Origin: Trichosphaerium sp. ATCC 40318
Taxonomy: Eukaryota; Protista; Tubulinea
NCBI GenBank assembly: GCA_038496445.1
Contig: JALMLS010000500.1
Location: 18,972-82,971, forward strand
Direction of reading: 5' to 3'
Length of the DNA stretch: 64,000 nucleotides
Under the pieces are notes generated by a model. It did not search any database. It had not been told where the DNA came from and was given only the letters and a program-made list of their open reading frames with translations. Positions 22 through 62,157 of this stretch are shown in pieces. The translations under genes and the position numbers were made by a program. Each line of letters starts with the position of its first letter. The first letter of the stretch is position 1.

Positions 22-2101
22 GCTTGGTAGCTGCCTGTTACCTCGCGAAACAAGGGAAAAAAGTGGCAGTTGTAGAGAAACGGCATGTGGTAAGCGCGCA
101 AATCTCAAATAGAAGTTGACCTTAATTCAACAGCTTGGTGGCGCTGCTGTGACGGAGGAAATAGTCACTGACTTCAAGTTTTCGCGATGCTCTTATGTAC
201 TTTCCCTTTTTCGACCTGAGATCATCAAAACCTTAAAACTACACGACTATGGCCTCAAATTACTCCCAAGGTAAGGTAATTTTTATATTTGTGTTTCGTG
301 GTACTTTCTCAAACACGTGTTTTTTATTTTTTCCATTCTAACGTTCGAAAAGAGATCCTTCATCATTTACTCCGACGCGTGAAGCATCAGGTGATTATCT
401 TCTGCTTGGCAGTGACCCTAAGTTTAATCACGATCAAATCGCAAAGTTCTCAACACAAGGTACTGAATAGTAACATGTTTTCTTCTTTTGTAACAAGCTT
501 AGATGCTAAAAACTTTCCCAAATACGAATCTCTTCTTGAACGTGTTGTGGACGTCATTGAACCAATACTTGATGAGCCACCCATAGATATGAGTCGAAAA
601 AAACTAAAAGCAAGCATAAAAATCCAGGAAGATTCCTAACTTACAGTAGGACGTACTCTCTCAAGCAGCTTCAGCAATGCAACTCGTAAAGAGAATGAAA
701 AAATCGGATGCCAGTGTATCAGATGTTTACGAGATAATGTCCGCCCCTGCGTCAACAATACTGGACAGGTGGTTTGGTATGTTCAATTCTGCACAGTAAA
801 AGCTCATTTTAGTTTAGAGTCGGATATTCTAAAAGCAACACTTGCAACGGATTCTGTTATTGGGGCTATGACAAGTCCTTATTCTGAAGGCTCAGCTTAT
901 GTGTTACTACACCATTGTACGTTACAGAAAATATCTGAATTATGCCTACAAGCTGATAGTTATTAGTAATGGGTGAAACTAATGGAAAAAGAGGTGTTTG
1001 GTGCAACGTTCAAGGAGGAATGGGTGGAGTTAGGTACGAATTTTTGTACATCTTATGACTTTCTCACAACCCACAGCCAAGCCTTATCAAGGGCAGCAAC
1101 TGACTTGGGCGTCGAGATGTTTACAAACACTAATGTAAAGGAGATACTTTGCAATAATGGCAACGCAAGCGGTATTCTCTTAGATGATGATACTGTGGTT
1201 GATTCCAAGATTGTGTATCCTTCCAAATGATCACTGTAGTTGCTGTGTCTCATATTAGAATTTCTTAATAATCTAGACTATCCAATGCAACACCAGAAGT
1301 TACTTTTAATAAGTTATGTCGCCCTGAAGATCTACCAGATTCTTTTAAGAAGCATGTTAAAGGAATAGATTACAGCTCAGCAACGCTGAAAATGAACGTA
1401 GCACTAGATAAGATCCCTGATTTTCTATGTTGTGTACGTTAATCGAAGAAAAACAGCTTACTCATGGCACCTTAACTAGAATACTCACGGCAAGGTTGGT
1501 CCACAACATCATGGCACAATTCACCTTGAAGGATCTATGGAGGAAATACATCAATCTTATGTAGATGCAGTAACAGGCATACCATCTAAAAACCCAGTTG
1601 TTGAGATGACGTATGTCGAGTTTTATTTTTCAAAGAAAGTGTACTCAAACTGTTTTTTTTAGAATACCTTCTGCTCTAGATAACACCCTTGCGCCTGAAG
1701 GGAAACATGTGGCTTTATTTTTTGTCCAATATGCTCCGTATAAGTTGAAGCAAGGCCTGACTTGGGAAGATCCTAGTCTAAAAGAGAAGTTCGCTGATAC
1801 TGTGTTTGATAAAGTGGAACAGTTTGCTCCTGGCTTCAAATCATCTGTAATAGGACGTGATATTCTGTCCCCTCTTGATCTGGAGCGTGAATTCTCATTG
1901 ACAGGCGGTAATATATTCCATGGTAGCATGTCTTTGAACCAGCTGTATTTTATGAGACCTGCACCAAAGTTCTCTCGTTACCATACACCCATTGATGGGT
2001 TATACTTGTGTGGTGCAGGTGCTCACCCTGGTGGCGGTGTGATGGGTGCATGTGGAAGAAATGCAGCACTGGCAGCACTAGCAAGCCAAAGTAGTTGGTA
2101 A
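22..2101 (+). CDS. PYROXD2: Pyridine nucleotide-disulfide oxidoreductase domain protein 2 (phytoene dehydrogenase-like); 5'-partial, multi-exon
   Basis: Spliced exons give [23 protein letters not shown]|[39 protein letters not shown] and the C-terminal GGNIFHGSM...[23 protein letters not shown]. Confidence 0.92.
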
Positions 2102-6667: not shown

Positions 6668-9600
6668 TCAAGGTCCGTCATTGGTAGTACCCTTATTCTT
6701 GCCTTTTTTCTTCTTAGATTTTGAAGTATCAAGTGCTGGTTCTGATATAGCTTGCACGAGTTCATTAAGAAGCGTTTTGTAAGTGCTACGGAATTGTTGC
6801 CTGAATAGCTTGCTGTGATATGCCGCCAATTCTGCATTGACCATCTTCTCCAACAACCAGTTTCGTAGTTGATCATCATGAGAGAAAACAGGTGGGTAAG
6901 GTACAGGTGGTCCAAAACGTGGTACATCAGCCTGAGATGCCACACTTACTGTGTAGTACACTTTTGAGTTTCTACAAAATAATTAATGAAATTTTCAAAA
7001 CAACCAATTTATTGATCACAAAGAAAATTACGTACGCAGTTGCATTGGCCTCCTTTAGTACACGAACAACAATAATTATTTGAATATAATTGGATTTGAC
7101 AGTAGTAGGATCAAAAGGATCAGATCCTTCCTCTTGAAAAACGACCAATATGATGTCGTTTCCTATGTGTCGTTTTTTTGCCCACTAAAAAAAATTGTCA
7201 GTCAAATACTGTTATTCTGTCTCGTTTACCTGTTGATTATTATCCTGTGTAGGTAACATAGTAGCAACATGATACATAATCTCATTATTTCGGAACTTTG
7301 TAGTGATAGCGTGTGTTCCAGTAGTATTGGCTATTAAATCATTTAGTACAATCAGAAGTTAAAAGTCCTACGAAACGTACACTTAGCATCCAATCCACCC
7401 AAAAAGCCTGTGTAGCCCTGCATTACAACGCGACTACCAAGCAACGTCAAGAATTTCTCGTAGTCAGCACTTCCAGCGGAATTACAGAACATTTCCTCTT
7501 CCTTACTCTGACCTACTTTACAAAGCATGACACCAAACTTAAATTTATGCGTCACGCGCATATCACGCTGCTCGTAAGCCAAAAATCCCTATTCATGTTG
7601 CGTAAGTATTTATCGCTCAAAGTAATTAATTTAAAAAAAGCCAACCTGTTGAAGACCATGTTTCTTCTCACAAATCTTGAATTCCTTGTTTTCAAATGTG
7701 GGGAAAATTTTTTTAAGTCCTTCCAAACTTCTTTCAGGCCAACTGTCATACTGCTCCTTTGAAATAGGAAGACAACCCTTCTTAATACCCTTTACATACT
7801 CGTAAGCCATCCAGTAATATTACAACTAAACGTACATCTTTCGATCGAATAATAGCCCTATAACTGTACACACCATTATCATTCTAAACAATACGATAAG
7901 TATAACTTCTCCATGACGTATAATAACGCACTTCAGCCTTAATGGAGGCTATTACCACTTCATTGGAGTCCTGAGGCGTTATAAAATTTCTATGCTCTAA
8001 GGAAATACGAAGTGAGAAACACAAAAAGAAAAGATCAGTTCGCTACCTTGACCCAAAAAATACTCTTGATACCAGTGAGAGTTATGTGGAAGATAATCTT
8101 TCCACGTCTCGGGTGAGACATCAGTAGTACCTCCTTCCACAATGAACCCAGTGGAACCAGTTACAACATTTATGGACGCAAAAATCTCTTCAACTCTCTC
8201 AACGACAGCTGTTGCTTCATTGAACACACCGACATCAGTTTGTGCAGTAAGTTTTGCAAGCACACTTTCCAATTTTGATACCAAGAATGCTATAGTAGGA
8301 ATTATCCTCTTAATAATACGTTGGAGTTTTGGATCAGTGATCATATCTTCTTCCTCTTGCGTAAGCACTGGAGGCTCAAAGTCTTTATCTGCTTCTATTG
8401 AATCCAATTGTTTTCCAAGCATCACAACCAATTTAGAGAACTGAGACACCCGAACAAAACTACTGGTGCTCCTCACTGTGTAAAAGGCAGCTGATATAGC
8501 ATTCAGTTTTTCAATATGCTCATGTAGGAGCTTCTGAATGGGGTCTAGCTTGTATGGAGGCATGCTTGGTTGCTTGCGTTGATTCTGATATTGTTGGCGG
8601 GCCTTGGCATGGGCACGCAATGGTACTTTTGCTTGAGTAATCGTTGTACTTTGTTTAGGTCTAGTCGTTTTGGCCTGTTTACTATGTCGCGCGCCAGCTC
8701 CAGCTTTGGACTAATGGTGTCAAAAAAATCTACTTTTAAAAATACAGCCATAAAAAATAATATTACCCCAGATCCAGAATCTCCTGCGCCGCTATTAATA
8801 CTTGACACTGACTGAGAAGCAGTTTTAGTTGGAATGGCTGGTGGGTTATATCCTAGCAAACAAACGATTAGTCGCGGCACAAAAGCGCACAGAATTGGGT
8901 TAAAAAAAAAAAGCGAAGACGAAAAAAACCTTGTTGCTCAAATTCTAATTCAAGTGGTACCTGGGAATCTGTAGAAGAAAAACGCATCCTTGAATGGGTG
9001 TGACTTGCTAACGTGTTCTATGAGGTTACGCTTTCGTAGTGCTTCGCCAAAGGCAGTGGCTTGCTTACGCGTCCAGCCAAATTCTTTGCATAACCACAAA
9101 ATTGCTTCTGATCCAATAAACGAGCATTTGTATGTTTTGAAATGATAAACACGATCACGAATGTCAACACCCTGACGAAATTGTATAAATTTTAATTGGA
9201 AATCGCTCTCATTTAGCTCAGTAGTCGAAGATATGAATCGGTAAAAGTAGAATCCATCACGGAAAAAAGGTATTCGTGATACGTGCTCCATCATTCCTCT
9301 ATCAACGAGCATTTGGCAGAAATACACAGACTCCTCGCGGTCCCATTCCATCTCACTTACTAGCCAATCAACTGCTTCGAGAGCTAAATTGGGATTATTT
9401 AGTGTTGTGTTAAAAAAATATTGCGTGCAGTCATTTGCAACTGCAATCAATACTGTGGCTATAGCCTTCTTTGCCAAAGTAGCCAAAAGTAATAATAAAT
9501 AAAACCGCTTAAAATCAACGCGTTGCTTACTATTTGCAAACGTGACGACGTTGTAGCGTGGGGAGGTTACATAACGGCGTAGTGTTGCAAAAAGAGTAAA

Positions 9601-10001
9601 ATAAAAAAAGATTTTTTTTGTAGAACGGGTTAAAACGCTCTCACGAATTCTATTTGAGCAATAAGATTCGCGAGGCATGCTTTGTAAACGAAAATAAAGA
9701 AACTACGAGATCTGACTTCGATTGTTTCTTTTTTGAGCTTTTTTTTTGTCACCAATTGTATCAATTGTATATCTATTCGGCAGAAAAACACTAAAATACT
9801 CGTATCTGAACGCGCACCAATGAAACAGTCGTCATACAGCTTGTCGTTGTACTTGTTCGCCTTGATCTCAATGCCATTAGGTCCAGAAGCCATCTTATCG
9901 ACAACAGCTTGAATACCAAAATCGATCAGGGCAGCATAGACACGCTTCTTGTCTACCTCCCTCCCGTTTGCCTTAGGAGGATCACTTGGTAGTTCACTCA
10001 T
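6668..10001 (-). CDS. Rap GTPase-activating protein with two N-terminal DEP domains, multi-exon
   Basis: RapGAP motifs HKFKFGVMLCK, EEEMFCN, GFLGGLD, EIMYHVATM and KKRHIGNDII (Asn thumb). DEP motifs CFIALEAVDWL...EHVSR...FYFYRF and SFIGSEAILWL...EHVSKSHPFKDAFFFYRF. Exons join in frame through GT-AG introns. Confidence 0.85.
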
Positions 10002-23137: not shown

Positions 23138-26100
23138 ATGTCTAGTCTATTGGTATGTGGTTTTGTGCTGTTGGAAGCAAATGAGACATGTTAAGTTTTT
23201 TTTCGCTTATTTCAAATTAGCACAGATTTGCCGCGCAACGTACAACGAACGAATTAATCATAGCGTATTTATTAACGTATATAGATGTCGAAGACGCGTT
23301 CTGGGCGAACAATTAATGAGAAACGCCATAAATCGGCGTTAGAAGACCTAGCCGCTGTCAGAAGTGGTGGTGCAAGCCGTCTGGATACTTTGGAGGTAAT
23401 TTACATGTTAACATAACGGTTACTAACACAAAACAAGCTTGATGATACTTCAGTACTCGTAGAACTCAACGACGATGAGTTCCAGAAACACGTTCAAAAG
23501 CGGCGCACGGATAACTTCAGAACAGTCGTTGATGACGTTGGTACGTTAAACCATGTGCTGAATACGCGACAGGATGACCTGACGCCTATTGTAGAGGGAG
23601 AATATACGGATATTGGCGGGGAAGATATATACTACACAGAAGGAGATGAGTACTCCGACGACGAGGATGTAGCGCCAACAAAACGCGGGAAGCGCAAACG
23701 TAAGTTTCCCCTTTATAAAACATTGAACGCTATTCAAACCTTACCACAACGATAGGGAATACTGCCAAACTCACAGCAGAGCAGCTTAAAAAGAAGCGTA
23801 GGCTTGAGAAGAAAAGAGAGGCAAACCGTACGCCTAGTAAACAATTGGAACAGATGTGGTATAAACAAGTTCAACATAAGACCACTAAGAAGGTACGTTG
23901 GCGCCTTTTTCTTGTTCCAAAATCAGAGATTTAACAAAAACCGGTTGAACGTCCTTGTTTCGTTAGTCGTATTCACTTCGCTTGTAGGTAATTAAACCAG
24001 AGCCTCCTTCATACTCGTCAGCTTTCTCAAACGAAAACACCGATCTCAATGCTATGTACAGCCAAATGTACAGTAATCCACACGGTACCAAGAAGTCTAC
24101 AAAAGGCAAGAAAGGCAAAACGAAACGTGGTAAAAAACCAAAACGGATGGGCGTATACGCTTCACAAGATAGCCTCAATAGTTCAATATCAAACTTGTCT
24201 GTAAGTGGCGATAGCGTATCTAGCAGTAAAGCAATGGACATAGAGCCAAAGACACAAGCATCTCCTAAACCGCAACAAGCAAAAAAGCCAGTGAAACAAC
24301 CAGTAAAACAGGTACAGTATTCACTAAACGTGATTTGGATCAAAACTTACATTTTTTTTTTAAATAGGTTGTACGCGTTGATAAGAAACCTGTTCTGGTC
24401 GCTAAGAAGCCTGCCTCGAAACCTAGTGCTCCTAAATCAGCTTACGATGTTTCTGCAAAGCCTGTTGCTGCATCAAGCGCCGGTGCCTTTGCTGCAGAAG
24501 ATGATAAATTCGAACAAACTGGCGAAGATTTCTTCCAAGTCGCTGGTTCAATATCTAATACTCCAACTCAAAAGAGTAAGTTTTTGTCTCTCACAAAAAA
24601 AACCGTCACGCTCATTTCCTCGTTTCTAGGCAAAGCTAGCTTCCGTTCTTTACCTGCTCCATTGAATGAGCAAGGATTAATGCACATGTACTGGATAGAT
24701 ATGCAACAAGATAAAAGACAAAGAGGTTTGTGGACTTTTCTTTTTTCTTGTTTTTTTTTTAAATAGGGTCATTCAAGTATGATTATTTACGACTTTATTA
24801 GATACTGTCCACATTTTTGGTAAAGTGTACAGTGATACTACACGCCAATGGGTATCATGCTGTGTTCACGTTACAAACATTGAACGTACACTCCTAATAG
24901 CTCCAAGAAAGTTTCCAGAACAAATTAATGAAGAAAAGTCTGCAGATTCTAGGGAATGCTACTTTGGTACTTTTTTAGCGAATTGTTTTAGTGAAATTGC
25001 TTGCAGTGACTTACATTTTTATGCTATAGATAAGCTAAACTTGGCCGCTGATAGGCCTGTGGATATAAATAAAGATGTTTTGGGTGAATTTAACCTCATC
25101 AGACAAAAGCACAGAATTGGAAATGTCATGTCAAAAATTGTAAAGAGAAAGTATGCTTTTGAAATAGAGGGTACGCAATACTCTTCGGGGTTTTTTACCA
25201 GCCTTTTTTTTGCCTCTTTATTGCGATTCTTAGAAACCTCGTAATTTTGTTTCTCTATTCTTTTTTGCTATTCTAGTTCTCACAGCTAGCCTAGATGTTG
25301 AGCAAGGAGAATCAGAATATGTCAAAGTTATTTACTCTGGAAAAGACGCTCAAATTGACCAAAAATACCTTACTGGTAACACATACTCTCGTATCTTTGG
25401 TTCCCAGACAAGCGCGCTTGAATCATTGATTGTAAAGCGTAAGATTAAGGGACCAAGCTGGCTTGTTCTACGCAAACCAAAAAGAGCTACATCGCTTGTT
25501 TCATGGTGTAAGATGGAACTTACACTTGATGATCCTAGAGCTATAGCTGTATCTGAAGAACAACCAAAGCCTCCACCACTTGTTGTCATGTCACTAAAGG
25601 TCACACCAGCCTTCAACCGAGATAAAAACCAAAACGAAGTGTGCTGCGTCACTGGATTATATCACACTGCAGGTTCGTTTTATTACCATTTTTTTTATTG
25701 CTAGTCAGCCTTTCTTTGTCTTCTGACAAGCATCTAGTGAACCCTGATGAGATTCTTTCGAATCCTAAACGTGGTATTCGCTATTTCACAGCAGTAAGGC
25801 GCCTACCTAAGGTCAGCTTTCCACATGACTTTGAATCAAATGTGAAACGTCAAAAGAAAAATATTGAAGTTCACAGAAACGAGGCTAGTATGCTCAATTC
25901 TCTAATGGGTGCGTTGCTCTTTTGAGAAAATTTTTTGTTCTTTGGACATTTTCTTCTGTGCCTATTTTGCTTTCTTATAGTTTTCCCTAGCATCCATCAT
26001 TACTGTAGACCCTGATGTAGTAGTTGGACACAATTTTATTGGTTTTGATTTAGATGTACTCTTGCATCGTATGAGACACTGTAAAGTAGCCAATTGGGAT

Positions 26101-29100
26101 CAACTAGGTCGCTTACGTCGTTCTACAATGCCACGTCTTCAAAAAGGTAAGAAATATTCAACACTTTTTGGTCCCTTTGTCAAAGAAGTGGTGCCGTGAC
26201 AGCTGTGTTGGTGAACCTTTTTATGCTTATATTTTATGCTTTAGGTGCTGGTGGAACATCAGACTCAAACGCATCTGAGAAAGAAGTAATGGCAGGTCGT
26301 TTGATTTGTGATACTTGGGTATCTTCAAAAGAATTCGCACCAAAGTCCTCCAACTACAAACTCGCCACACTTGCTAGAAGCCAGCTTGGTATCAAAAGGT
26401 ACTTACTACTCAACATTCTCTCGATGGGTTCTTTCTGTTTTCTTGCTGTATCTCTTCTTATAGCTGTTCTAGGAGAGAAATCGAGAACGATAAGATTGTC
26501 AACTACTACCAAACATCAAAATCTCTCATGTTCCTTTGCGAGCACAACTCAAATGATGCTTACTTATCTTTCCTTCTAATGAACAAACTCAATGTCTTGC
26601 CTCTCACAAAACAACTCACAACACTCTGTGGTAATAGATGGAATAGATCTCTTAGCTCAGTAGGTTCAGAGCGTGTTGAGTACCTATTGCTTCATGAATT
26701 CCATGCCTTGAAATACGTTGTTCCTGATAAGGAGTACTTATCCAGAAAAGGTACCCTTCATCTCTCCTTGTTTGCATTTCTTTGCTTCATTTTTAAACCA
26801 TGTAATGTCTTACACGTTGTTTGTAGAATGGGCAAAGAGAAAGGGCGCCAAATTGGTCGGTGGTAAAGTCCTAGAGCCAAAGAGCGGTCTATATGATAAA
26901 TGTGTTCTCTTGCTTGATTTCAACAGTTTGTATCCAAGTATCATTCTGGAGTACAACATTTGCTTTACAACTGTTGAGCGTATATCATGTGCTTCTGATA
27001 AGCATGATACAACAACATGGGAAGCTGCTGAACCTGGTCCAACAGTAGAAACTGGTATACTGCCTCGTGTAATTGGAAACTTGGTGCGTTTTTTTCTTCA
27101 ATTTCTCTTTTTTTTCTTATGTTGGACTATCTCTGACGTTCTTCCTTTAGTTGAAGTCTCGTGGTGTAGCAAAGAAGATGCTTAAATCTGCAACAGAACC
27201 ATCTAAAAAGCAACAATACAACACACAACAATTGGCGCTTAAACTCGTAGCAAATAGCATCTACGGTTGTCTCGGTTTTACCAACTCAAGGTAAGCTATT
27301 TGTTTGCTAAGGAAAAAATAGCAAGATCTCATCTTCTCTTAGGTTCTACGCAAAGCCTTTGGCTTCCCTCATTACTGGCAAAGGTCGTGCAGCCCTAGAC
27401 AAATGTAAAACGGTCGCAGAAGAGCAACTAGGTCTTAACGTATGTATTTTTCTTTACTTAAAGCCTTCCAATGTTCTACATAAACTTAACTCGGTCATTA
27501 GGTAATTTATGGTGATACTGATTCCATTATGGTTTACACAGGTCTAACAGACCTTGTCGAAGTCAAAAAACTTGCCCGTGTTGTCATTGACGCAATCAAC
27601 GAGTCATACAAGCACATTGAACTTGACATGGATGGTATCTTTAAACGCATGCTTCTTCTAAAGAAAAAGGTACCTCGACTTTACCTCTTACCTCACATCA
27701 CTCAGCTTTGCTTGTACTCACCTATTCGTTAGAAATATGCATCTCTTATGATTACTGAACATCCTGGTAACAAAATTACAACGTATCGCGAATGTAAAGG
27801 TTTGGATTTGGTCCGTCGTGATTGGTGTGTTCTAAGTAAAGAAATGGGTTCTAAGATTCTTGATGATATCCTTTCTGACAAAAATGGTGATGAAGTTGTT
27901 GAAAGCATTCACACCTACCTTACTGATATTGTACACCTTTTACTCAATAGTAGTTTTTCTGTCGCACACGCAAAGTACTGACCACTATTTTTAGGGCGAA
28001 AAAATCCGCACGGCAAAATTCCATTGTCTAAATATGTTGTAACAAAGAGTCTCACTAAAGCTCCAAAAGACTATGCTCACCCAGAACAACATCCCCATGT
28101 TGTTGTCGCTCAGCGTGCACAAAAAAATGGCAAACCTGTTCGTGTAGGTGATCATATTGAATATGTCATTATTGAAGACAAAGACACGAGTCATATAGCC
28201 CAAAGGTACACCTTTTCGACTTTGTTTAATGTTTCAGTTTGTTGATATTTATGATAGGGCTCGTTCACCGGAAGAGGTTGCAAAATCTCAAGGTAAAATG
28301 GGTATTGATATTAACTGGTATATTACCTCCCAACTATTGCCTCCAAGTACGATTTTGACTTCGAGAAAAAACCTAAAAGCTTCGAAAAAGCTAACTCTTG
28401 CTCCCTAGCTTCTCGTCTATGTGAGTACCTTGAGGGAACTTCTCATAGACAACTCGCTATTGCTCTTGGTGTTGATCCTGCTAAATACACAGCAAACACT
28501 TCAAGCACATCAGGTACTTCATTGCTCTCCAGTCTAAAGACTTTTTTTTTTTTGGCTTTGTAAAATGTTGTTTGTCTTCTTGTTTGACGTTATTCTAGAG
28601 TATCTTCCTAGAGGCAATGTTAACGACACAATTAAATACAGAAATTGTGAGAAAGTTGTTCTTGTTAATCCAAAAACACGTGAAGAGCATGAGTTCAAAG
28701 GTGTTATGGATCCTCGATTTTTCTCTGATCCTAGTGGCACTTTGCTTTTCTCTGGTAACCCCTTTTGACTTCTTACTCTAAAGCACTTATTAACTCTCTT
28801 CCAAATAGATGGTACTCCAATATCTGCTGGACGATTACTTAATGCGTTACAGATGCTTGCAAGAAAGCACTTGTACGTTATATTTTTTTGATACTATTTT
28901 TTTTTGGAGTACAAGTGTGTTTGAGGCGCTAACTTTATTCTTCTTTAAGGAAAATGTACTATGACTACAACATGGTTTCTACAGAGCCTACAATGAGGGT
29001 AAATACGCCTAACTTTATCTGGAAGAATGGTACTGCACAAAATTTTTGTTTCAAGGAAACAATACTAACCGAAAACGTTTAGATCGACCAAAAGTCATTG

Positions 29101-29524
29101 TTGATGGCACCCCAGTCATTGTCACCAAAGAGTACCCTGCAGTAAAGCTCCACTTACAACTTGAGTACATGTATAATATGTTCAATATTGAGCGCAAGCG
29201 ACAACGTGAAACTAACGCGGGTACGCATAATATTTTTTTTCATTTTTTTCCTTCTTGGAGAGTTACTTGCTTTTTTGGATACTGATTGCTCTCTTCTTTA
29301 GGTGCTTGGTCTAATTTCGAAAAAAGACTCGATGTTACTACAAAACACATCTTCGCTCAATGTGGCAAGGCTGTCAATGCGTATGCTTTGATTTTTTGTG
29401 TTTTTTTTACCTTCCTGTTGTGAAATTCTTAATTTATTCTTGCTTTAGGCATTTGAGCAAGAATGCTTTCCACTGGGTATCTTTGGGTAAACTATTTGGA
29501 GATATTTACCCTTCCGATATGTAA
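23138..29524 (+). CDS. POLA1: DNA polymerase alpha catalytic subunit, multi-exon
   Basis: Family B motifs [35 protein letters not shown] and [10 protein letters not shown]. Pol alpha-specific [36 protein letters not shown] and [11 protein letters not shown]. Confidence 0.96.
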
Positions 29525-29633
29525 AAAAGAAGAATTTTAAAGAATGAGTTGTCTAAATGCGTCGAAAGGTTAAGTTGAAATGTATAATGTAATGTAGCAT
29601 ATAAAGCAATCCTTAAATGATCTTTGTCCCTTT

Positions 29634-29914
29634 CTAAATATTTGATATATTAAACATATCTGGCGTGGAGAACTCAGAGTTGTGGTTTCCTGACATTTTG
29701 TGGCTGTACAAATCGAGTTTTACGGACGGTGCATAGTCAACCTAGAGGCGTAACAGCTAGAGGCAGCGCACTGTGAGGTTTATGTTCAAAATCCTTGTCA
29801 GCTGCTGGGTACTTTGATGATTTTCACTCCCTTTGTTTGAGAGGAGTGCCTTCTTTTGCTCTTTTGTAGCTTCTGCACTGATGCTTCAGGAACAGGTTCC
29901 TTAGCTTTATCCAT
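29634..29914 (-). CDS. Possible small two-exon hypothetical protein (~75 aa)
   Basis: MDKAKEPVPEASV...KIIK splices in frame via GT..AG to VDYAPSVKLDLYSHK...NI*. No homology recognised. Confidence 0.3.
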
Positions 29915-30057
29915 CCATGTCGGCAACCACCAAGGTCAATAGCATAGATACAGAAAGTGTTCGAAAGCAGAAGTTCAGTAACCACTAATATCAATCTTTA
30001 TTATTGTATTTACAGAAAATTTTGTGCTAAAACATGAACGTGCATACCCGTCATACA

Positions 30058-30576
30058 TTAGTACTTACGTTGTATTATGTAGCTAGGGGTTGAAACCTTA
30101 GGCTTGGGTTTAAATGAAGGTTCTATTGGAAGTAGCCCATAGTAATCCACTACAAGAGCGAGTTTGTTGTCTTTACAGCATGCTTCTCTTAAAGAAGAGA
30201 TAGGAGGGGTTGTTGTCAGCGCACATGCTCGAAGATGGTCCAAAATAATGTCAAACCTTTTTGGATTTAAATCCAAAAAGAATCGGTTTTGTTTATCTCT
30301 TGCAAGGCTTTTATTCCATCTACCACTGAACATTGCTGCTAGTAACGAACCCTCTACTTGACAAAGAGTACGTCTAGTAGTAGAAATGTTCGTCCCGCCA
30401 ACATTAAGGTCTATAATATCATTTGGACTACAACTCTTGTAGTCAGCCATTAATTCCTTTTCTCGTTTGAGTTGCTTTTTGTCTTGTTCTAATTTACATC
30501 TTTCCTTTGAAATATCTTGCTTATGCGCTTCTAATTGTTCATCTACAAACTTAAATACTTTATCTAAGCTCTGCAT
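30058..30576 (-). CDS. KCTD-type BTB/POZ domain protein with an N-terminal coiled coil
   Basis: IIDLNVGGTNISTTRRTL...SLLAAMFSGRW...RFFLDLNPKRFDIILDHLR. Appears intronless; a further 3' exon is possible. Confidence 0.88.
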   Translation of the reverse strand: MQSLDKVFKFVDEQLEAHKQDISKERCKLEQDKKQLKREKELMADYKSCSPNDIIDLNVGGTNISTTRRTLCQVEGSLLAAMFSGRWNKSLARDKQNRFFLDLNPKRFDIILDHLRACALTTTPPISSLREACCKDNKLALVVDYYGLLPIEPSFKPKPKVSTPSYIIQRKY

Positions 30577-30879
30577 GCAGCTGTGCGGTGTTATTAGTAA
30601 TTGTGCTTTAAATAGACTTGACTAAATTGGACCGTCGTCTGGCTCTTCATCGTGCTTAAAAGGGCTATGCTTGTAAGTCTTTGCACATCGCTAGTGTTCA
30701 ACCTTCATTAACAAGAGCTTTTGTTACAGATAACTGCATTCTTAATTACATTCTCGTGAAATCATAGTTCGAGTTAGCGATTAGTGCACAACCGAATAAA
30801 TGTGATAGTCTAGCGTTGGTTATAATTAATCTATATGTACAGATCCTGTGCATAGTTTATGATGGCGTTCATGCTCCAT

Positions 30880-31464
30880 TCACTTATTGTTTCTGTGTCC
30901 TCTAAGCTGTGGGCAACCATATAGTGTATGAGAACTATAAGCTTCACAAAGTATACATGTTTCTTCCACAGGACAGTTAAGGGCAAACCGTATATCTGAC
31001 TCTATGCTAACCAAAAATTCTCGAGCATCTCGGGTACTAGTGAATGTCACAGTATAAGTCATAGATCTTTGTCCTTTCAGTCTTCTTGTTCTAGAGTAGG
31101 TAAAGTGCAGAGTGTTACAGAAATGCAATGGATATCGTGCTGCCTCTAAAATCAAGGTTGACATCTTCTCAGCTATCTGTTCTGAGCTTTTAAGCAAGGT
31201 TAACGACTGAGTATTCTCCACATCTTTAGGAGGCTTTGATATATCCATTTTAACACCTGTGAACCAGAAAGCATCACTAGCAACCCAGTTTCGGAGAAAT
31301 ACTTCAATTGTATCTATTTCACTATATATACTTGCAATATGATACCTCCAAGCTTTACTAACGTGTCTGAATACATGAAGGTTCAATACAGGCAAATAAG
31401 TAATAATTTTCCTTTGTATTTCTTGAGGCAGTATCTCTTCCACTACTGAGACACAAGTGTCCAT
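30880..31464 (-). CDS. Intronless F-box protein with a C-terminal Cys/His motif
   Basis: LPQEIQRKIITYL...FRHVSKAW (F-box) and C-terminal CILC...H...CP. Confidence 0.75.
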   Translation of the reverse strand: MDTCVSVVEEILPQEIQRKIITYLPVLNLHVFRHVSKAWRYHIASIYSEIDTIEVFLRNWVASDAFWFTGVKMDISKPPKDVENTQSLTLLKSSEQIAEKMSTLILEAARYPLHFCNTLHFTYSRTRRLKGQRSMTYTVTFTSTRDAREFLVSIESDIRFALNCPVEETCILCEAYSSHTLYGCPQLRGHRNNK

Positions 31465-31624
31465 AATGTTCGAGTAACTTCGATGACGTTAACTATTACA
31501 ATCACGTATAATTGCATTGACTGTTGTCAACGATTATTTGATCACGTGACTTGGGGGTTTTTTAACACAAAAAGAAGGCCATTTTTTGAAACGAAAGTTC
31601 GTAAGACTTGGTTTGCACACAATA

Positions 31625-53225: not shown

Positions 53226-55449
53226 TTACAACTCGATACCCAATTCATCTAAGCCTAATTCATCCAATTTCATGTCATCTCCTTTGGCTCTATACAAATC
53301 CAAGCATGTAGAAAATACTTCTTCAGCAATCGGTTTATCCAAGCCAAGTTTCTTTAACGTCCGTTTTCTTTCATTTACAGGATCTTTACGTTTATCAAAA
53401 TCAAAGAAATGAGGGTAAAATGAATCTTTTGTGTTTTGATCAAATCCCTCAACTAATGTCTTCTCTTTACAATTCGTATTGTCTCTTACCAAAATATCAA
53501 TATCATCATCATTTTCCTAAAGTAAAACAGTCAGAAATAATGTCTCAATCGGCTTGTGAGTTGAAAAAGAAAGAAAGAAAAAAAACGGAAAAAAAAAAGT
53601 TTTTCTCTACTGTCTACGTACATCGTCTTTTATCTTTAGCCTACTAACCAAAGAGTAGAGTTCTGGACCTGCAAGAGATTGAGATATCGATATTCTTCCC
53701 AAAACATTTGGTATTGAGTAATAATCAGTTATCTGAAGTGGAACTTCATCCTCGTCTGATTTTTCTTTTTGTTGTTCTTCCAGATTAGCATTTTCCTGAT
53801 TTTCATCCTTAATCTTATCCTGCTCATCTGCGAGCGTTGACATCTTGTTTCCATCCTTGTCGGAATCTCTCAACGTCTCTCCATTAACATCATTTTTTTT
53901 ACGATTATTTTCAACATCATTTCTTTCACTCTTTGAAGCAGAGCCTTCTGTCCGATTATCATCTTTTCTATGAGTATAAGATCTTTTGTAATTATAATGA
54001 TTACTGAATTTCCTATCATTCCTATTACTTGCATATCTACCACGAGAAGGCGTTCTACTATTAGGTCGATCATCTCTAACATTAGTAGCACGTTCAGGTA
54101 ACCGCTGTCTACTAGGTTCTCTTCTTGAGTCTCTTATATCTCTAGGATGATCTCTGCCAGGTAATCTATTGATATCATCATAGTCACTAGCACTTCTCCG
54201 CCTTATATCACGGACATCACGACCACGATGATCATCACGTAATCTTTCATTGCGCATGTCATCACGGCGTATATCTCTACCTATAGACGCTGGTGGTTCT
54301 CTATGATCTCTTATAGGTTCCCTAGGAGGTTCTCTAAATACTCTATGATCTCTTGGATCTCTTGGATATGCATGAGTTCGCGGCCTATCTCTAAAATCTT
54401 GTCGTTCTCTTTCAGGTGGTGGACGATCAAAACCATGATAATTGTATCCTCCCACTGCACGTTCTTGATATCTAGGAAACTGAGGCGGAGGTGGTCTGTA
54501 AAAGGTATCTGTATGTACGTTAACAATGTATTTTAAACACGGCAATATCGAGGAACGAGGTTGTTAACAACAACCAAAAAACAACTAAAGCTTTGGTTTT
54601 TTCCAACTTTTTTTTAAATCGTACTTCTGCCCTGAATGGGTCCTCCTCTGATTGGTGGATTATCTATTATTGATAAGCTACTGCTTAATAGCTGTGTATT
54701 AAACATACTGTCATATCCTGGACCTCTTGGTTGGTGAGGTGGGGGCGCCCTATCATCATAGAATGTATCAGCTTTAAATCGCTTATTGCTTCCTTCAAAG
54801 CGACTAGTCCTCCCTATGAAATACAATTATTATTAAATCTTTCCGCACATCAAACATTCACATACCTGGCGACATTCGTCGTTTCCTGGGCATAGTTTCA
54901 GGAGGTGGATAAAACCCAAGTTTAGATTCAAAATCTCGCCTTAAGCTAGTGAGCAAATAAATTATTTTGAGGATTTGTTTTTTCAATGTACCCTCGTCCA
55001 GAACCATAACTGTGTCTTCTTGGTGATACAGGCCGTGGAACGTGGTGTATAGGCTGTCTAGGACGTGCAGGTGAGACAACTGGAGGTCTTAGAGGTCTAC
55101 GGTCTCTTATCGAGGAGCCATGATCTCTCGGACCAGAAGTGCGCCTTGGTGATATTGGAGGCCTACGGTCATTGTGTCTTGGTTTTGGTGCACCCCGTGG
55201 CTCAACAGGAAATCCCCATTGTGACTTTTTTGTTATTGTATTATAGTAGTAAGGTTTGCCAGTTTCTGTACTATGGCGTAACTGCCATCCATGTGGTAGA
55301 GTACGAGCATCTTTCTCCGAATGCGCCATGTGATTGCGTGTATCTTTTGAAACATCAGGACCTGGACGTCTACGTAAGCATATATACATCATAATGTGTT
55401 ACTTTTGGTTGCGAATCCTGACATTGCGCGCATAGAGTAAATTGTACAT
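53226..55449 (-). CDS. WW-domain, Arg/Asp/Pro-rich protein; may be the 3' part of the adjacent CCCH gene
   Basis: LPHGWQLRHSTETGKPYYYNTITKKSQW.FP (WW domain) and a long RD/RE-rich region. Confidence 0.75.
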
Positions 55450-61029: not shown

Positions 61030-61287
61030 TTCCGTTTAGCTAGTAGAATACGTCTACTCAGGTTCCGAGCGGCTCCACAGGTCCTCTCAAGAGTACCCTG
61101 TTTCACCAAGGGGTAGCAGGGCATACGGAACGGAACGCCCGCAAGTATAGTAACAATCTGCTTGCAATGCGAGGCTGACGATATTCCCAGCAAGGCTATG
61201 GTTGTCTTGTCAGAGTTGTTGGTGGTGATGAGAAAGGCTCTGGTCGAAAGACAATTTTTGCTATTGTTAGGAATAAACGGGCTTTTT
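61030..61287 (+). ncRNA. Candidate structured non-coding RNA, family unassigned
   Basis: GC-rich island with several helices containing G-U pairs that form only on the + strand, paired 5' and 3' ends, and a terminal T5 run. Confidence 0.45.
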
Positions 61288-61394: not shown

Positions 61395-62157
61395 TAGAAT
61401 TTTCTTCATATTTTTTGGTCAATGACCATGTTTTGCAACGAAAAAATTATCGAAACGTACTTCCACTTTGTTGAGGAAGTTATCCAACATCATATCATAT
61501 TCTAGAACAACAACAAACAATACATCATGAGCGTACTACAAGTCCAAACACAACTAGATGACGACTGCATCCCAGCATTTGATAAGTGCGTCAAATTTTT
61601 TTCTTTTTTCTTCACCACTCATTCCTTGTCTTCTTTTCTTCCTCACCGTCTCTTCAATAGATTCAAGATGGGAAAAGGAAGTCCTTACATTGTATACAAG
61701 CTTACTGATAATCATTCACGTGTTGTCATTGAAACAAAGGGAAGACAAGGAGATGATTGGCAAACACTTGTTGAAGAGCTACCAGAAAATGAACCAAGAT
61801 ATGTCTTATTCTCATACAATTACGATCTTGGATCAGATGGAAAAAGAACAAAGACTGTATTTCTTTATTGGTGTCCTATGAAGTCCGGTGTAAAAAACAG
61901 AATGTTGTACACATGCACCAGGATGTACTTGAAGTCTCTCTTTCATGTGCGTTCTTACAAACTTTCCTTTATTTAAACGAAAACGTTTTACCAACTCTTT
62001 GTTTGTAGGGTATCTCAGTAAGTATGCAAGCTGGTAGGAAATGTGATGTCACAAACGAGTCTGTATTGAATGTTTGTACAAGCAAATTCAGATAAAGACC
62101 ACAAATGTAGTAACTTCTTCACTTGTAAATGTAAATAAATCTTGTTCCTTTTCAAAT
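61395..62157 (+). repeat. Right arm of the inverted segmental duplication (partner 47769-48522)
   Basis: Near-identical reverse complement of 47769-48522. Confidence 0.95.
61527..62095 (+). CDS. ADF/cofilin family protein, copy B (3 exons)
   Basis: Same structure as copy A. Differs at K/Q (TKL vs TQL), E/K (FEM vs FKM) and Q/E (EQL vs EEL). Confidence 0.92.

What the first reader, a model, noticed from the sequence alone, without database searches (positions are those of the whole stretch)
28601..29524. DNA polymerase alpha C-terminal domain has lost all eight metal-binding cysteines
Seen in sequence: the spliced CTD reads [20 protein letters not shown]...TLLFSDG...[19 protein letters not shown]...KVIVDG...[19 protein letters not shown]. 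Established: the eukaryotic Pol alpha CTD has two four-Cys sites (CysA and CysB; human CPTC..CSNIDC and CEEPTC..CPAC, recalled from memory) that bind metal and support B-subunit and primase assembly. The flanking residues align well (YRxCE, YYD, EPT, EY..L..QL), but the ligand positions read NPKT, approximately LFSD, STEPTM and IVDG. Inference: a metal-free CTD, possibly with co-evolved Pol12 and primase, in an otherwise intact replicase.
Basis: partly seen in the sequence, partly recalled or inferred. Interest (0 to 1): 0.8.

Follow-up and report, generated by a model that had tools for sequence, protein, structure and literature searches.

The report
Cysteine-free DNA polymerase alpha tail
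An intact, intron-rich gene for the replicative DNA polymerase alpha encodes a C-terminal docking domain in which none of the eight normally invariant zinc-holding cysteines remains. The same kind of loss turns out to have happened several times in other eukaryotes, apparently without being described.

Summary
A 27-exon gene on the + strand (23285-29524) encodes a Pol alpha catalytic subunit of about 1425 aa with intact polymerase motifs A, B and C.

Its spliced C-terminal domain (CTD, six exons, 28599-29524) aligns colinearly with Pol alpha CTDs. It scores 73 bits against a profile of cysteine-intact CTDs. At the eight ligand columns it has N, T, (F/S/D), (gap/T), S, M, V and T. Of 219 aligned Pol alpha CTDs, 168 have all eight cysteines.

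No other CTD-like piece lies in 28300-31500 on either strand. The helix that binds the B subunit and the C-terminal primase-tether motif are kept.

The loss is not unique:
- CysB is gone in Porphyridium, Rhodosorus and Palpitomonas.
- CysA is gone in one metagenomic lineage.
- Both motifs are gone or nearly gone in a large clade of marine picoalga-like genes and in one further lineage.
- I found no paper describing any of this.

The nearest named relatives, Clastostelium, Cavostelium and Physarum (Amoebozoa), are all cysteine-intact.

Two things stay open. A cysteine-intact paralogue elsewhere in the genome could not be excluded.

Best reading: a working, metal-free CTD, a new variant of a known domain.

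The parts
23285..29524 (+). POLA1-type gene: 27 exons in my model, about 1425 aa. Exons upstream of about 25000 are less certain. An exon probably lies in 24576-24801 and is missing from the model.
   Evidence: Splice-aware dynamic-programming model guided by homologue matches. Pfam DNA_pol_B and DNA_pol_B_exo1 hit single exons. All best database hits are Pol alpha.
26916..26945 (+). Polymerase motif A ([10 protein letters not shown])
27241..27276 (+). Polymerase motif B ([12 protein letters not shown])
27502..27525 (+). Polymerase motif C (VIYGDTDS)
28599..29524 (+). C-terminal domain in six exons: 28599-28754, 28809-28872, 28950-29029, 29083-29220, 29302-29380, 29449-29524
   Evidence: Scores 73 bits against a profile of Cys-intact CTDs. 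Pfam PF08996 hits exons 1 and 4 colinearly at E 0.03-0.04.
28655..28825 (+). Zn-1 (CysA)-equivalent module without cysteines (VVLVNPKT ... LLFSDGTPIS). It spans intron 28755-28808. Its length is similar to the canonical module.
28969..29135 (+). Zn-2 (CysB)-equivalent module without cysteines (NMVSTEPTM ... [15 protein letters not shown]). It spans intron 29030-29082.
29148..29186 (+). Conserved helix [13 protein letters not shown], matching the L-Y-x-Q-L-x-Y-x-x-x-L-F-D helix of other CTDs that contacts the B subunit
   Evidence: Alignments. Role taken from Klinge 2009, PMC2693882.
29462..29500 (+). C-terminal [13 protein letters not shown] motif, equivalent to the NAY-x-x-V-x-L-x-x-LF tail that includes the primase-binding peptide
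   Evidence: Alignments. Role taken from PMC5333051.

Best explanation
This is a functional replicative DNA polymerase alpha catalytic subunit whose C-terminal docking domain no longer uses structural zinc. Both zinc modules are still present as segments of about normal length. The four ligands of each have been replaced (N/T/F-S-D/T and S/M/V/T), and the flanks are rich in beta-branched and hydrophobic residues (VVLV, LLF, MV, VIV, VIVT). The likely mechanism, which is inferred, is that the two beta-ribbon 'handshakes' are held by hydrophobic packing and backbone hydrogen bonds instead of a metal. This is what happened in cysteine-less forms of other zinc-ribbon proteins. The three-helix backbone, the B-subunit-binding helix and the primase-tether tail are retained. 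The domain should therefore still anchor the B subunit and primase, presumably with a matching change in the B subunit's OB-domain docking site for Zn-2. Shown: the gene is intact, it belongs to Pol alpha, all eight cysteines are absent, and the non-ligand landmarks are retained. Inferred: absence of metal, retained partner binding, and that this is the organism's working (and only) POLA1.
For: - Gene integrity: the reading frame stays open through 27 exons with canonical splice signals, and motifs A, B and C are intact. Pfam DNA_pol_B and exo1 hit single exons.
- Identity: every strong hit is Pol alpha. The protein groups with the amoebozoan Pol alphas (SH-aLRT 88 with 38 rows; 98 with 15 rows).
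- No ligands: no Cys at any of eight columns where 168 of 219 CTDs have all eight. The CTD has two Cys in total, both outside the ligand columns, and its six His are scattered.
- No hidden exon: no alternative CTD-like coding piece in 28300-31500 on either strand.
- Landmarks kept: N-x-x-x-x-x-x-R-x-x-x-x-x-YY, LHLQLEY...[13 protein letters not shown].
- Precedent: independent natural Pol alphas lack CysB, CysA or both, in red algae, Palpitomonas and abundant picoalga-like lineages. This shows that such CTDs persist in living organisms.
- Expression hint: a run labelled as probable RNA holds 31% of the sampled 31-mers of 26800-29540. A fully covered mature mRNA could hold at most 53% and genomic DNA about 100%. 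This is consistent with transcription but does not prove it.
Against:
- The protein sits on a long branch (1.27-1.44 against a median of 0.75-0.82). It is only 36-41% identical overall to any Pol alpha, while Physarum and Clastostelium share 52%. That would also fit a divergent second copy.
- It keeps only 14 of 30 strongly conserved non-Cys CTD positions (median for intact CTDs 24). Some of the losses flank CysB, for example T-R becoming T-P.
- In yeast and human, Zn-2 is a major part of the B-subunit interface (PMC2693882, PMC5333051), so loss of its ligands could mean loss of that contact.
- The B subunit, primase and the rest of the genome could not be examined.
Confidence: 0.6

Rival explanations
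1. It is a divergent paralogue. The genome also carries a canonical, cysteine-containing POLA1 that does the replicative work. This copy evolves under relaxed or altered constraint on its CTD, perhaps acting without the B subunit or with other partners.
For: - The branch is long and the protein is about equally distant (44-48% in the core) from amoebozoan, fungal and animal Pol alphas.
- CTD conservation is lower than in most sequences (14 of 30 positions).
- If the earlier notes on insertional mitochondrial editing in this genome mean it is a myxomycete, an orthologue should sit next to Physarum. The AU test rejects that clade, p = 0.005.
Against: - No second copy is known. Only 2 earlier notes on this genome mention a DNA polymerase, and neither is another Pol alpha.
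- The gene keeps everything a replicative Pol alpha needs: the N-terminal region, motifs A-C, the B-subunit helix and the primase tether.
- Other lineages with cysteine loss are also fast-evolving Pol alphas.
- The organism's proteome is absent from the databases, so its position is simply unknown. The AU test shares the model's long-branch pull.
Confidence: 0.2
2. The CTD still binds metal through non-cysteine ligands (Asp, His, Glu, Met or Ser) recruited near the old sites.
For: An Asp (D1281 or D1336) lies in or next to the second half of each module. Some cnidarian Pol alphas have Asp at one CysA column, pattern CCDC.
Against: No module has more than one plausible ligand. The replacements are N, T, S, M, V and T, and the six His of the CTD lie elsewhere.
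Confidence: 0.05
3. It is an artefact: wrong splicing, assembly error or a decaying pseudogene.
For: There is no read-level RNA support. Earlier notes on this genome describe single-base 'missing' positions, which could reflect homopolymer errors in the assembly.
Against: - Eight independent substitutions cannot arise from indel errors.
- The frame is open through all 27 exons, and the CTD exons align colinearly to Pfam and to a custom profile.
- No alternative coding piece exists nearby.
Confidence: 0.05

Closest known systems
Canonical eukaryotic Pol alpha CTD (Pfam PF08996 zf-DNA_Pol; yeast Pol1 CTD-Pol12 and human p180C-p70 structures)
   Same: Same position after the thumb and linker, same order of elements (module 1, helices, module 2, helix, tail), conserved YY, L-x-x-QL-x-Y-x-x-x-F and NA-x-x-x-V-x-L-x-x-LF landmarks, and similar module lengths.
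   Different: None of the eight cysteine ligands of Zn-1 and Zn-2 is present. Single exons stay below Pfam's cut-off, and the spliced CTD scores 73 bits where intact CTDs have a median of 149.
Cysteine-poor Pol alpha CTDs of other lineages found here: Porphyridium purpureum KAA8490764.1, Rhodosorus marinus, Palpitomonas bilix (CysB lost); P0158 (CysA lost); P0165/P0298-P0307, P0387-type and P0155 (both lost or nearly lost)
   Same: They are natural Pol alphas with otherwise recognisable CTDs that lack one or both C4 motifs, and most sit on long branches.
   Different: The events are independent, in different supergroups. In the picoalga-like clade the Zn-1 module is replaced by an Ala/Pro-rich insert and 0-2 CysB cysteines remain. 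Here both modules keep about their length and all eight ligands are substituted.
Cysteine-less ('C-minus') forms of zinc-ribbon proteins, for example bacterial ribosomal protein S4 and topoisomerase IA Topo_C_Rpt versus Topo_C_ZnRpt
   Same: A small ribbon module that ancestrally held a structural zinc survives after its ligands are lost (abstracts of PMC3087516 and PMC9369019, listed).
   Different: These are unrelated proteins. The analogy concerns mechanism only and was not tested here.
CTDs of Pol epsilon, delta and zeta
   Same: Homologous docking domains for B subunits with CysA and CysB motifs (PMC7544198).
   Different: In Pol delta and zeta CysB holds an Fe-S cluster. The window's protein is clearly Pol alpha by its core and its tree position.

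Membership tests
Eukaryotic DNA polymerase alpha catalytic subunit (POLA1/Pol1, family B) | Family-B palm motifs A (D-x-x-SLYPS), B (K-x-x-x-NS-x-YG) and C (YGDTDS) | tested here: met
   [22 protein letters not shown] and VIYGDTDS are in the spliced product. Pfam DNA_pol_B hits exons with E down to 2.5e-21.
Eukaryotic DNA polymerase alpha catalytic subunit (POLA1/Pol1, family B) | Best matches and tree position are among Pol alpha, not delta, epsilon or zeta | tested here: met
   All top hits are Pol alpha. Every named protein in the tree set is a Pol alpha. The protein groups with the amoebozoan Pol alphas.
Eukaryotic DNA polymerase alpha catalytic subunit (POLA1/Pol1, family B) | Pol alpha-type N-terminal region and exonuclease-like domain | tested here: met
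   DNA_pol_B_exo1 hits an exon. The N-terminal exons align to Clastostelium residues 2-140.
Pol alpha CTD (PF08996 zf-DNA_Pol) | Sequence homology to the CTD profile | tested here: met
   The spliced CTD scores 73 bits against a profile built from 19 Cys-intact CTDs. Pfam hits exons 1 and 4 colinearly at E 0.03-0.04, below the gathering score because only single exons could be submitted.
Pol alpha CTD (PF08996 zf-DNA_Pol) | Two C4 metal-binding motifs (CysA/Zn-1 and CysB/Zn-2) | tested here: not met
   0 of 8 ligand columns hold Cys, while 168 of 219 aligned CTDs have 8 of 8.
Pol alpha CTD (PF08996 zf-DNA_Pol) | B-subunit-binding helix and C-terminal primase-binding peptide | tested here: met
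   [13 protein letters not shown] and [13 protein letters not shown] align with the conserved helix and tail. Actual binding was not tested.
Pol alpha CTD (PF08996 zf-DNA_Pol) | Binds zinc and binds Pol12/p70 and PriL/p58 | not testable with these tools
   The partners are not in the window. The spliced CTD has no single reference, so it could not be sent for structure prediction.

The most novel reading that the evidence does not exclude
The two zinc modules of the Pol alpha CTD are textbook-invariant and, in yeast and human, part of the B-subunit interface. In nature they may be dispensable. This organism would run its primosome with a completely metal-free p180C-type platform. Eukaryotes would have made the same transition repeatedly: here, in red algae, in Palpitomonas, in stramenopile-like lineages and in abundant marine picoalgae. 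That implies repeated co-evolution of the B-subunit docking site.
Probability: 0.5. Interest if true: 0.65.

Novelty: new variant of a known kind. Interest (0 to 1): 0.55.

Why it matters
Reviews and structural papers describe the Pol alpha CTD as carrying two conserved four-cysteine zinc modules. Zn-2 docks snugly on the B subunit's OB domain and also takes part in auto-inhibition of the primosome (PMC2693882, PMC5333051, PMC7544198).

A natural, otherwise intact Pol alpha with no ligand left, together with the other lineages found here, provides ready-made test cases for three questions:
- What is the zinc actually for: folding, partner recognition, or redox and metal sensing?
- How is the catalytic-subunit to B-subunit interface rebuilt without it?
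- Has the long-disputed Fe-S versus Zn question for CysB any functional weight in Pol alpha?

It also cautions against using the cysteine pattern as a diagnostic when annotating family-B polymerases of protists.

Tried and rejected
After that, no letters of 24729-24772 went to any external search tool. Local scripts did read the whole window file. One local tblastn printout and the gene-model script touched that stretch. My model leaves it inside an 'intron', so an exon is probably missing there.
- Profile trick. I aligned Clastostelium Pol alpha with 24 exon translations to pull out close relatives. MAFFT scattered the fragments, so I dropped it.
- Close relatives. None exist in the databases. 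The best match to the thumb exon among 1.84 billion representatives is 59%. A cofilin exon from the window shares no words with any of 5.8 billion clusters. A complete 172-aa BTB ORF is not on record. The organism could therefore not be named and selection on the CTD could not be measured.
- Organism identity. Physarum polycephalum was considered because of the earlier notes on mitochondrial editing. Its Pol alpha (P0166) is cysteine-intact and only 40% identical.
- Trees. The AU test on the 38-row tree did not finish. A 15-row test did.
- Other searches. Rfam found nothing in the window. A PDB search with a 26-aa CTD exon found nothing.
- Structure prediction. The spliced CTD was left out because a spliced product has no reference and long sequences may not be typed.
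- First gene model. The minimum-intron model skipped real exons. It was replaced by a model scored on codon usage plus homology anchors.
Full report
**What is there**

The window is eukaryotic nuclear DNA, 38% G+C, with many short spliceosomal introns. On the + strand, 23285-29524 holds one long gene. Single exons hit Pfam DNA_pol_B_exo1 and DNA_pol_B, and the first CTD exon hits zf-DNA_Pol weakly.

I built the gene model in two rounds. A minimum-intron path skipped real exons. A second model scored exons by codon usage plus anchors from local tblastn matches to fetched homologues, and scored introns by donor, branch and acceptor signals. It gives 27 exons and about 1425 aa. Motifs A ([10 protein letters not shown]), B ([12 protein letters not shown]) and C (VIYGDTDS) are intact, and the N-terminus aligns to the N-terminus of Clastostelium Pol alpha. 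The 5' third of the model is less certain. An exon is probably missing in 24576-24801.

**The observation**

The CTD is encoded by six exons: 28599-28754, 28809-28872, 28950-29029, 29083-29220, 29302-29380 and 29449-29524. Its six introns are 53-85 nt, begin with GTA, and end in TAG or AAG.

I fetched Pol alpha proteins two ways:
- a search with the thumb exon against 1.84 billion representatives;
- a word-indexed search seeded with the best full-length hit.

In alignments of their CTDs, the eight ligand columns are all Cys in 168 of 219 sequences. The window's protein has N, T, (F/S/D), (gap/T), S, M, V and T. The whole 189-aa CTD has two cysteines, both outside the ligand columns.

Against a profile built from 19 cysteine-intact CTDs, the spliced CTD scores 73 bits. 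The median for the set is 149, and other cysteine-poor CTDs score 58-71.

I tested every stop-to-stop piece of 28300-31500 on both strands against that profile. Only the model's own exons match (E 1.7e-6, 3.9e-4 and 0.01). Nothing downstream or in another frame does, so no hidden cysteine-bearing exon exists nearby. Pfam PF08996 matches exon 1 at profile positions 3-34 and exon 4 at 111-141, which is colinear.

**What is kept**

Both modules keep roughly canonical length, and their flanks are hydrophobic or beta-branched ([34 protein letters not shown]). Three landmarks remain:
- the N-x6-R-x5-YY helix;
- the helix [13 protein letters not shown], where the consensus is L-Y-x-Q-L-x-Y-x-x-x-L-F-D;
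- the tail [13 protein letters not shown].

[quoted passage not shown] A short C-terminal peptide tethers primase. Zn-1 points into solvent (PMC2693882; PMC5333051).

The CTD is more diverged than most, keeping 14 of 30 strongly conserved non-Cys positions against a median of 24. CTD identity to other Pol alphas is 18-24%, against 44-48% to the cysteine-intact homologues in the core (39% to two cysteine-poor ones). That core-to-CTD ratio is only a little lower than between cysteine-intact pairs.

**Relatives and the paralogue question**

No close relative exists in the databases. The best match to the thumb exon is 59%. Overall identity to any Pol alpha is 36-41%.

The nearest named proteins are from the amoebozoans Clastostelium recurvatum, Cavostelium apophysatum and Physarum polycephalum (EukProt). 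All three have the eight cysteines.

Trees place the window's protein with these three on a long branch:
- SH-aLRT 88 with 38 rows under the mixture model;
- SH-aLRT 98 with 15 rows under LG+G4.

An AU test rejects a clade of the window's protein plus Physarum, p = 0.005. That test shares the model's long-branch pull.

Earlier first-stage notes on this genome describe insertional mitochondrial RNA editing (unchecked), which would suggest a myxomycete. If that is right, the tree position is odd for an orthologue and leaves room for an old, divergent paralogue. If it is wrong, the protein is simply the Pol alpha of an unsampled amoebozoan-like lineage.

The species itself is not in the protein collections. 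A cofilin exon of the window shares no words with any cluster, and a complete BTB ORF is not on record. Among earlier notes on this genome, only two mention a DNA polymerase, and neither is another Pol alpha. I could not search the rest of the genome, so the paralogue question remains the main open point.

**RNA evidence**

The look-up of sequencing runs found two runs, labelled as probable RNA, that hold 31% and 7% of the sampled words of 26800-29540. Purely exonic 31-mers make up 53% of that stretch. So 31% fits partial coverage of a mature mRNA and does not fit fully covered genomic DNA.

Local scripts that read the whole window did touch them.

**The loss is recurrent**

The same alignments show other natural Pol alphas without one or both motifs:
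- CysB is replaced in Porphyridium purpureum (KAA8490764.1), Rhodosorus marinus and Palpitomonas bilix. It is also replaced in several unnamed proteins, some of which (P0049, P0159/P0117) fall within the stramenopile clade of the tree; the others are P0048, P0021, P0118, P0121 and P0138.
- CysA is replaced in P0158/P0066.
- Both are gone in P0155/P0020 (a JGI metagenome) and in P0165.

A search seeded with P0165 found a large clade of intron-less genes from marine metagenomes: P0298-P0307, and a 1603-aa type seen on dozens of contigs. In these the Zn-1 module is replaced by an Ala/Pro-rich insert, and only 0-2 of the four CysB cysteines remain. One of them, P0298, still matches PF08996 at 3e-25 over its CTD.

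P0165, the representative of this clade in the tree, is sister to land plants. Their loci have 69% and 49% G+C. Prasinophyte (Mamiellophyceae-like) picoalgae are a reasonable guess, but this is an inference because no names were available.

In the tree, most cysteine-poor proteins sit on long terminal branches (0.66-2.34, most above 1.0), against a median of 0.82 for all rows.

I found no paper describing any of these losses. Current reviews state that each eukaryotic family-B CTD carries a pair of C4 motifs (PMC7544198; PMC5333051).

**Mechanism**

The best-supported reading is a working Pol alpha whose CTD folds and docks without metal. The two ribbon pairs would be held by hydrophobic packing, as in cysteine-less versions of other zinc ribbons (ribosomal protein S4 and topoisomerase IA repeats; abstracts listed). 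The helical backbone and tail would still carry B-subunit and primase binding. This is inferred. Metal content, folding and partner binding were not and could not be tested here.

Rivals:
- a divergent paralogue beside a canonical copy (0.2);
- residual metal binding through other ligands (0.05), unlikely because no module has more than one candidate ligand;
- an artefact or pseudogene (0.05), unlikely given the open frame through 27 exons and eight independent substitutions.

**Verdict**

The interpretation as a metal-free CTD is reasonable. The feature is a new variant of a known domain rather than a new kind of system. It is one instance of a wider, apparently undescribed pattern of zinc-module loss in Pol alpha. 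Interest is moderate to fairly high for replication biochemists. It is limited by the untested paralogue question and the lack of RNA and structural evidence.

Noticed in passing
L001:501-5006; L002-L004:501-5312 (proteins P0303, P0387; also P0165, P0298-P0308): A large clade of intron-less Pol alpha genes from marine metagenomes, probably prasinophyte-like picoalgae (sister to land plants in the tree; loci at 69% and 49% G+C). The CysA module is replaced by an Ala/Pro-rich insert and only 0-2 of the four CysB cysteines remain.
   Followed up: partly
P0131 (Porphyridium purpureum KAA8490764.1), P0276/P0277 (Rhodosorus marinus), P0088 (Palpitomonas bilix): Named species whose Pol alpha CTD keeps CysA but has lost all four CysB cysteines.
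   Followed up: partly
window 61527-61976 (+): ADF/cofilin (actophorin-like) gene. The best PDB matches are actophorins and yeast cofilins. No word-sharing protein was found in the 5.8-billion-cluster collection, so the organism's proteome is not in the databases.
   Followed up: partly
window 61030-61287: Another first-stage note flags a structured ncRNA candidate of about 255 nt here. Rfam at gathering thresholds finds nothing anywhere in the window.
   Followed up: no
window 30058-30576 (-), 30880-31464 (-), 8950-9678 (-), 54946-55392 (-), 1613-2101 (+): Neighbouring ORFs with BTB_2, F-box, tandem DEP and WW domains, and a phytoene-dehydrogenase-like exon. They look like ordinary eukaryotic genes in the same intron and G+C style as the polymerase gene.
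   Followed up: no
window 24576-24801 (+): My gene model treats this as a 226-nt intron, but an exon of the Pol alpha N-terminal domain probably lies in it.
   Followed up: no
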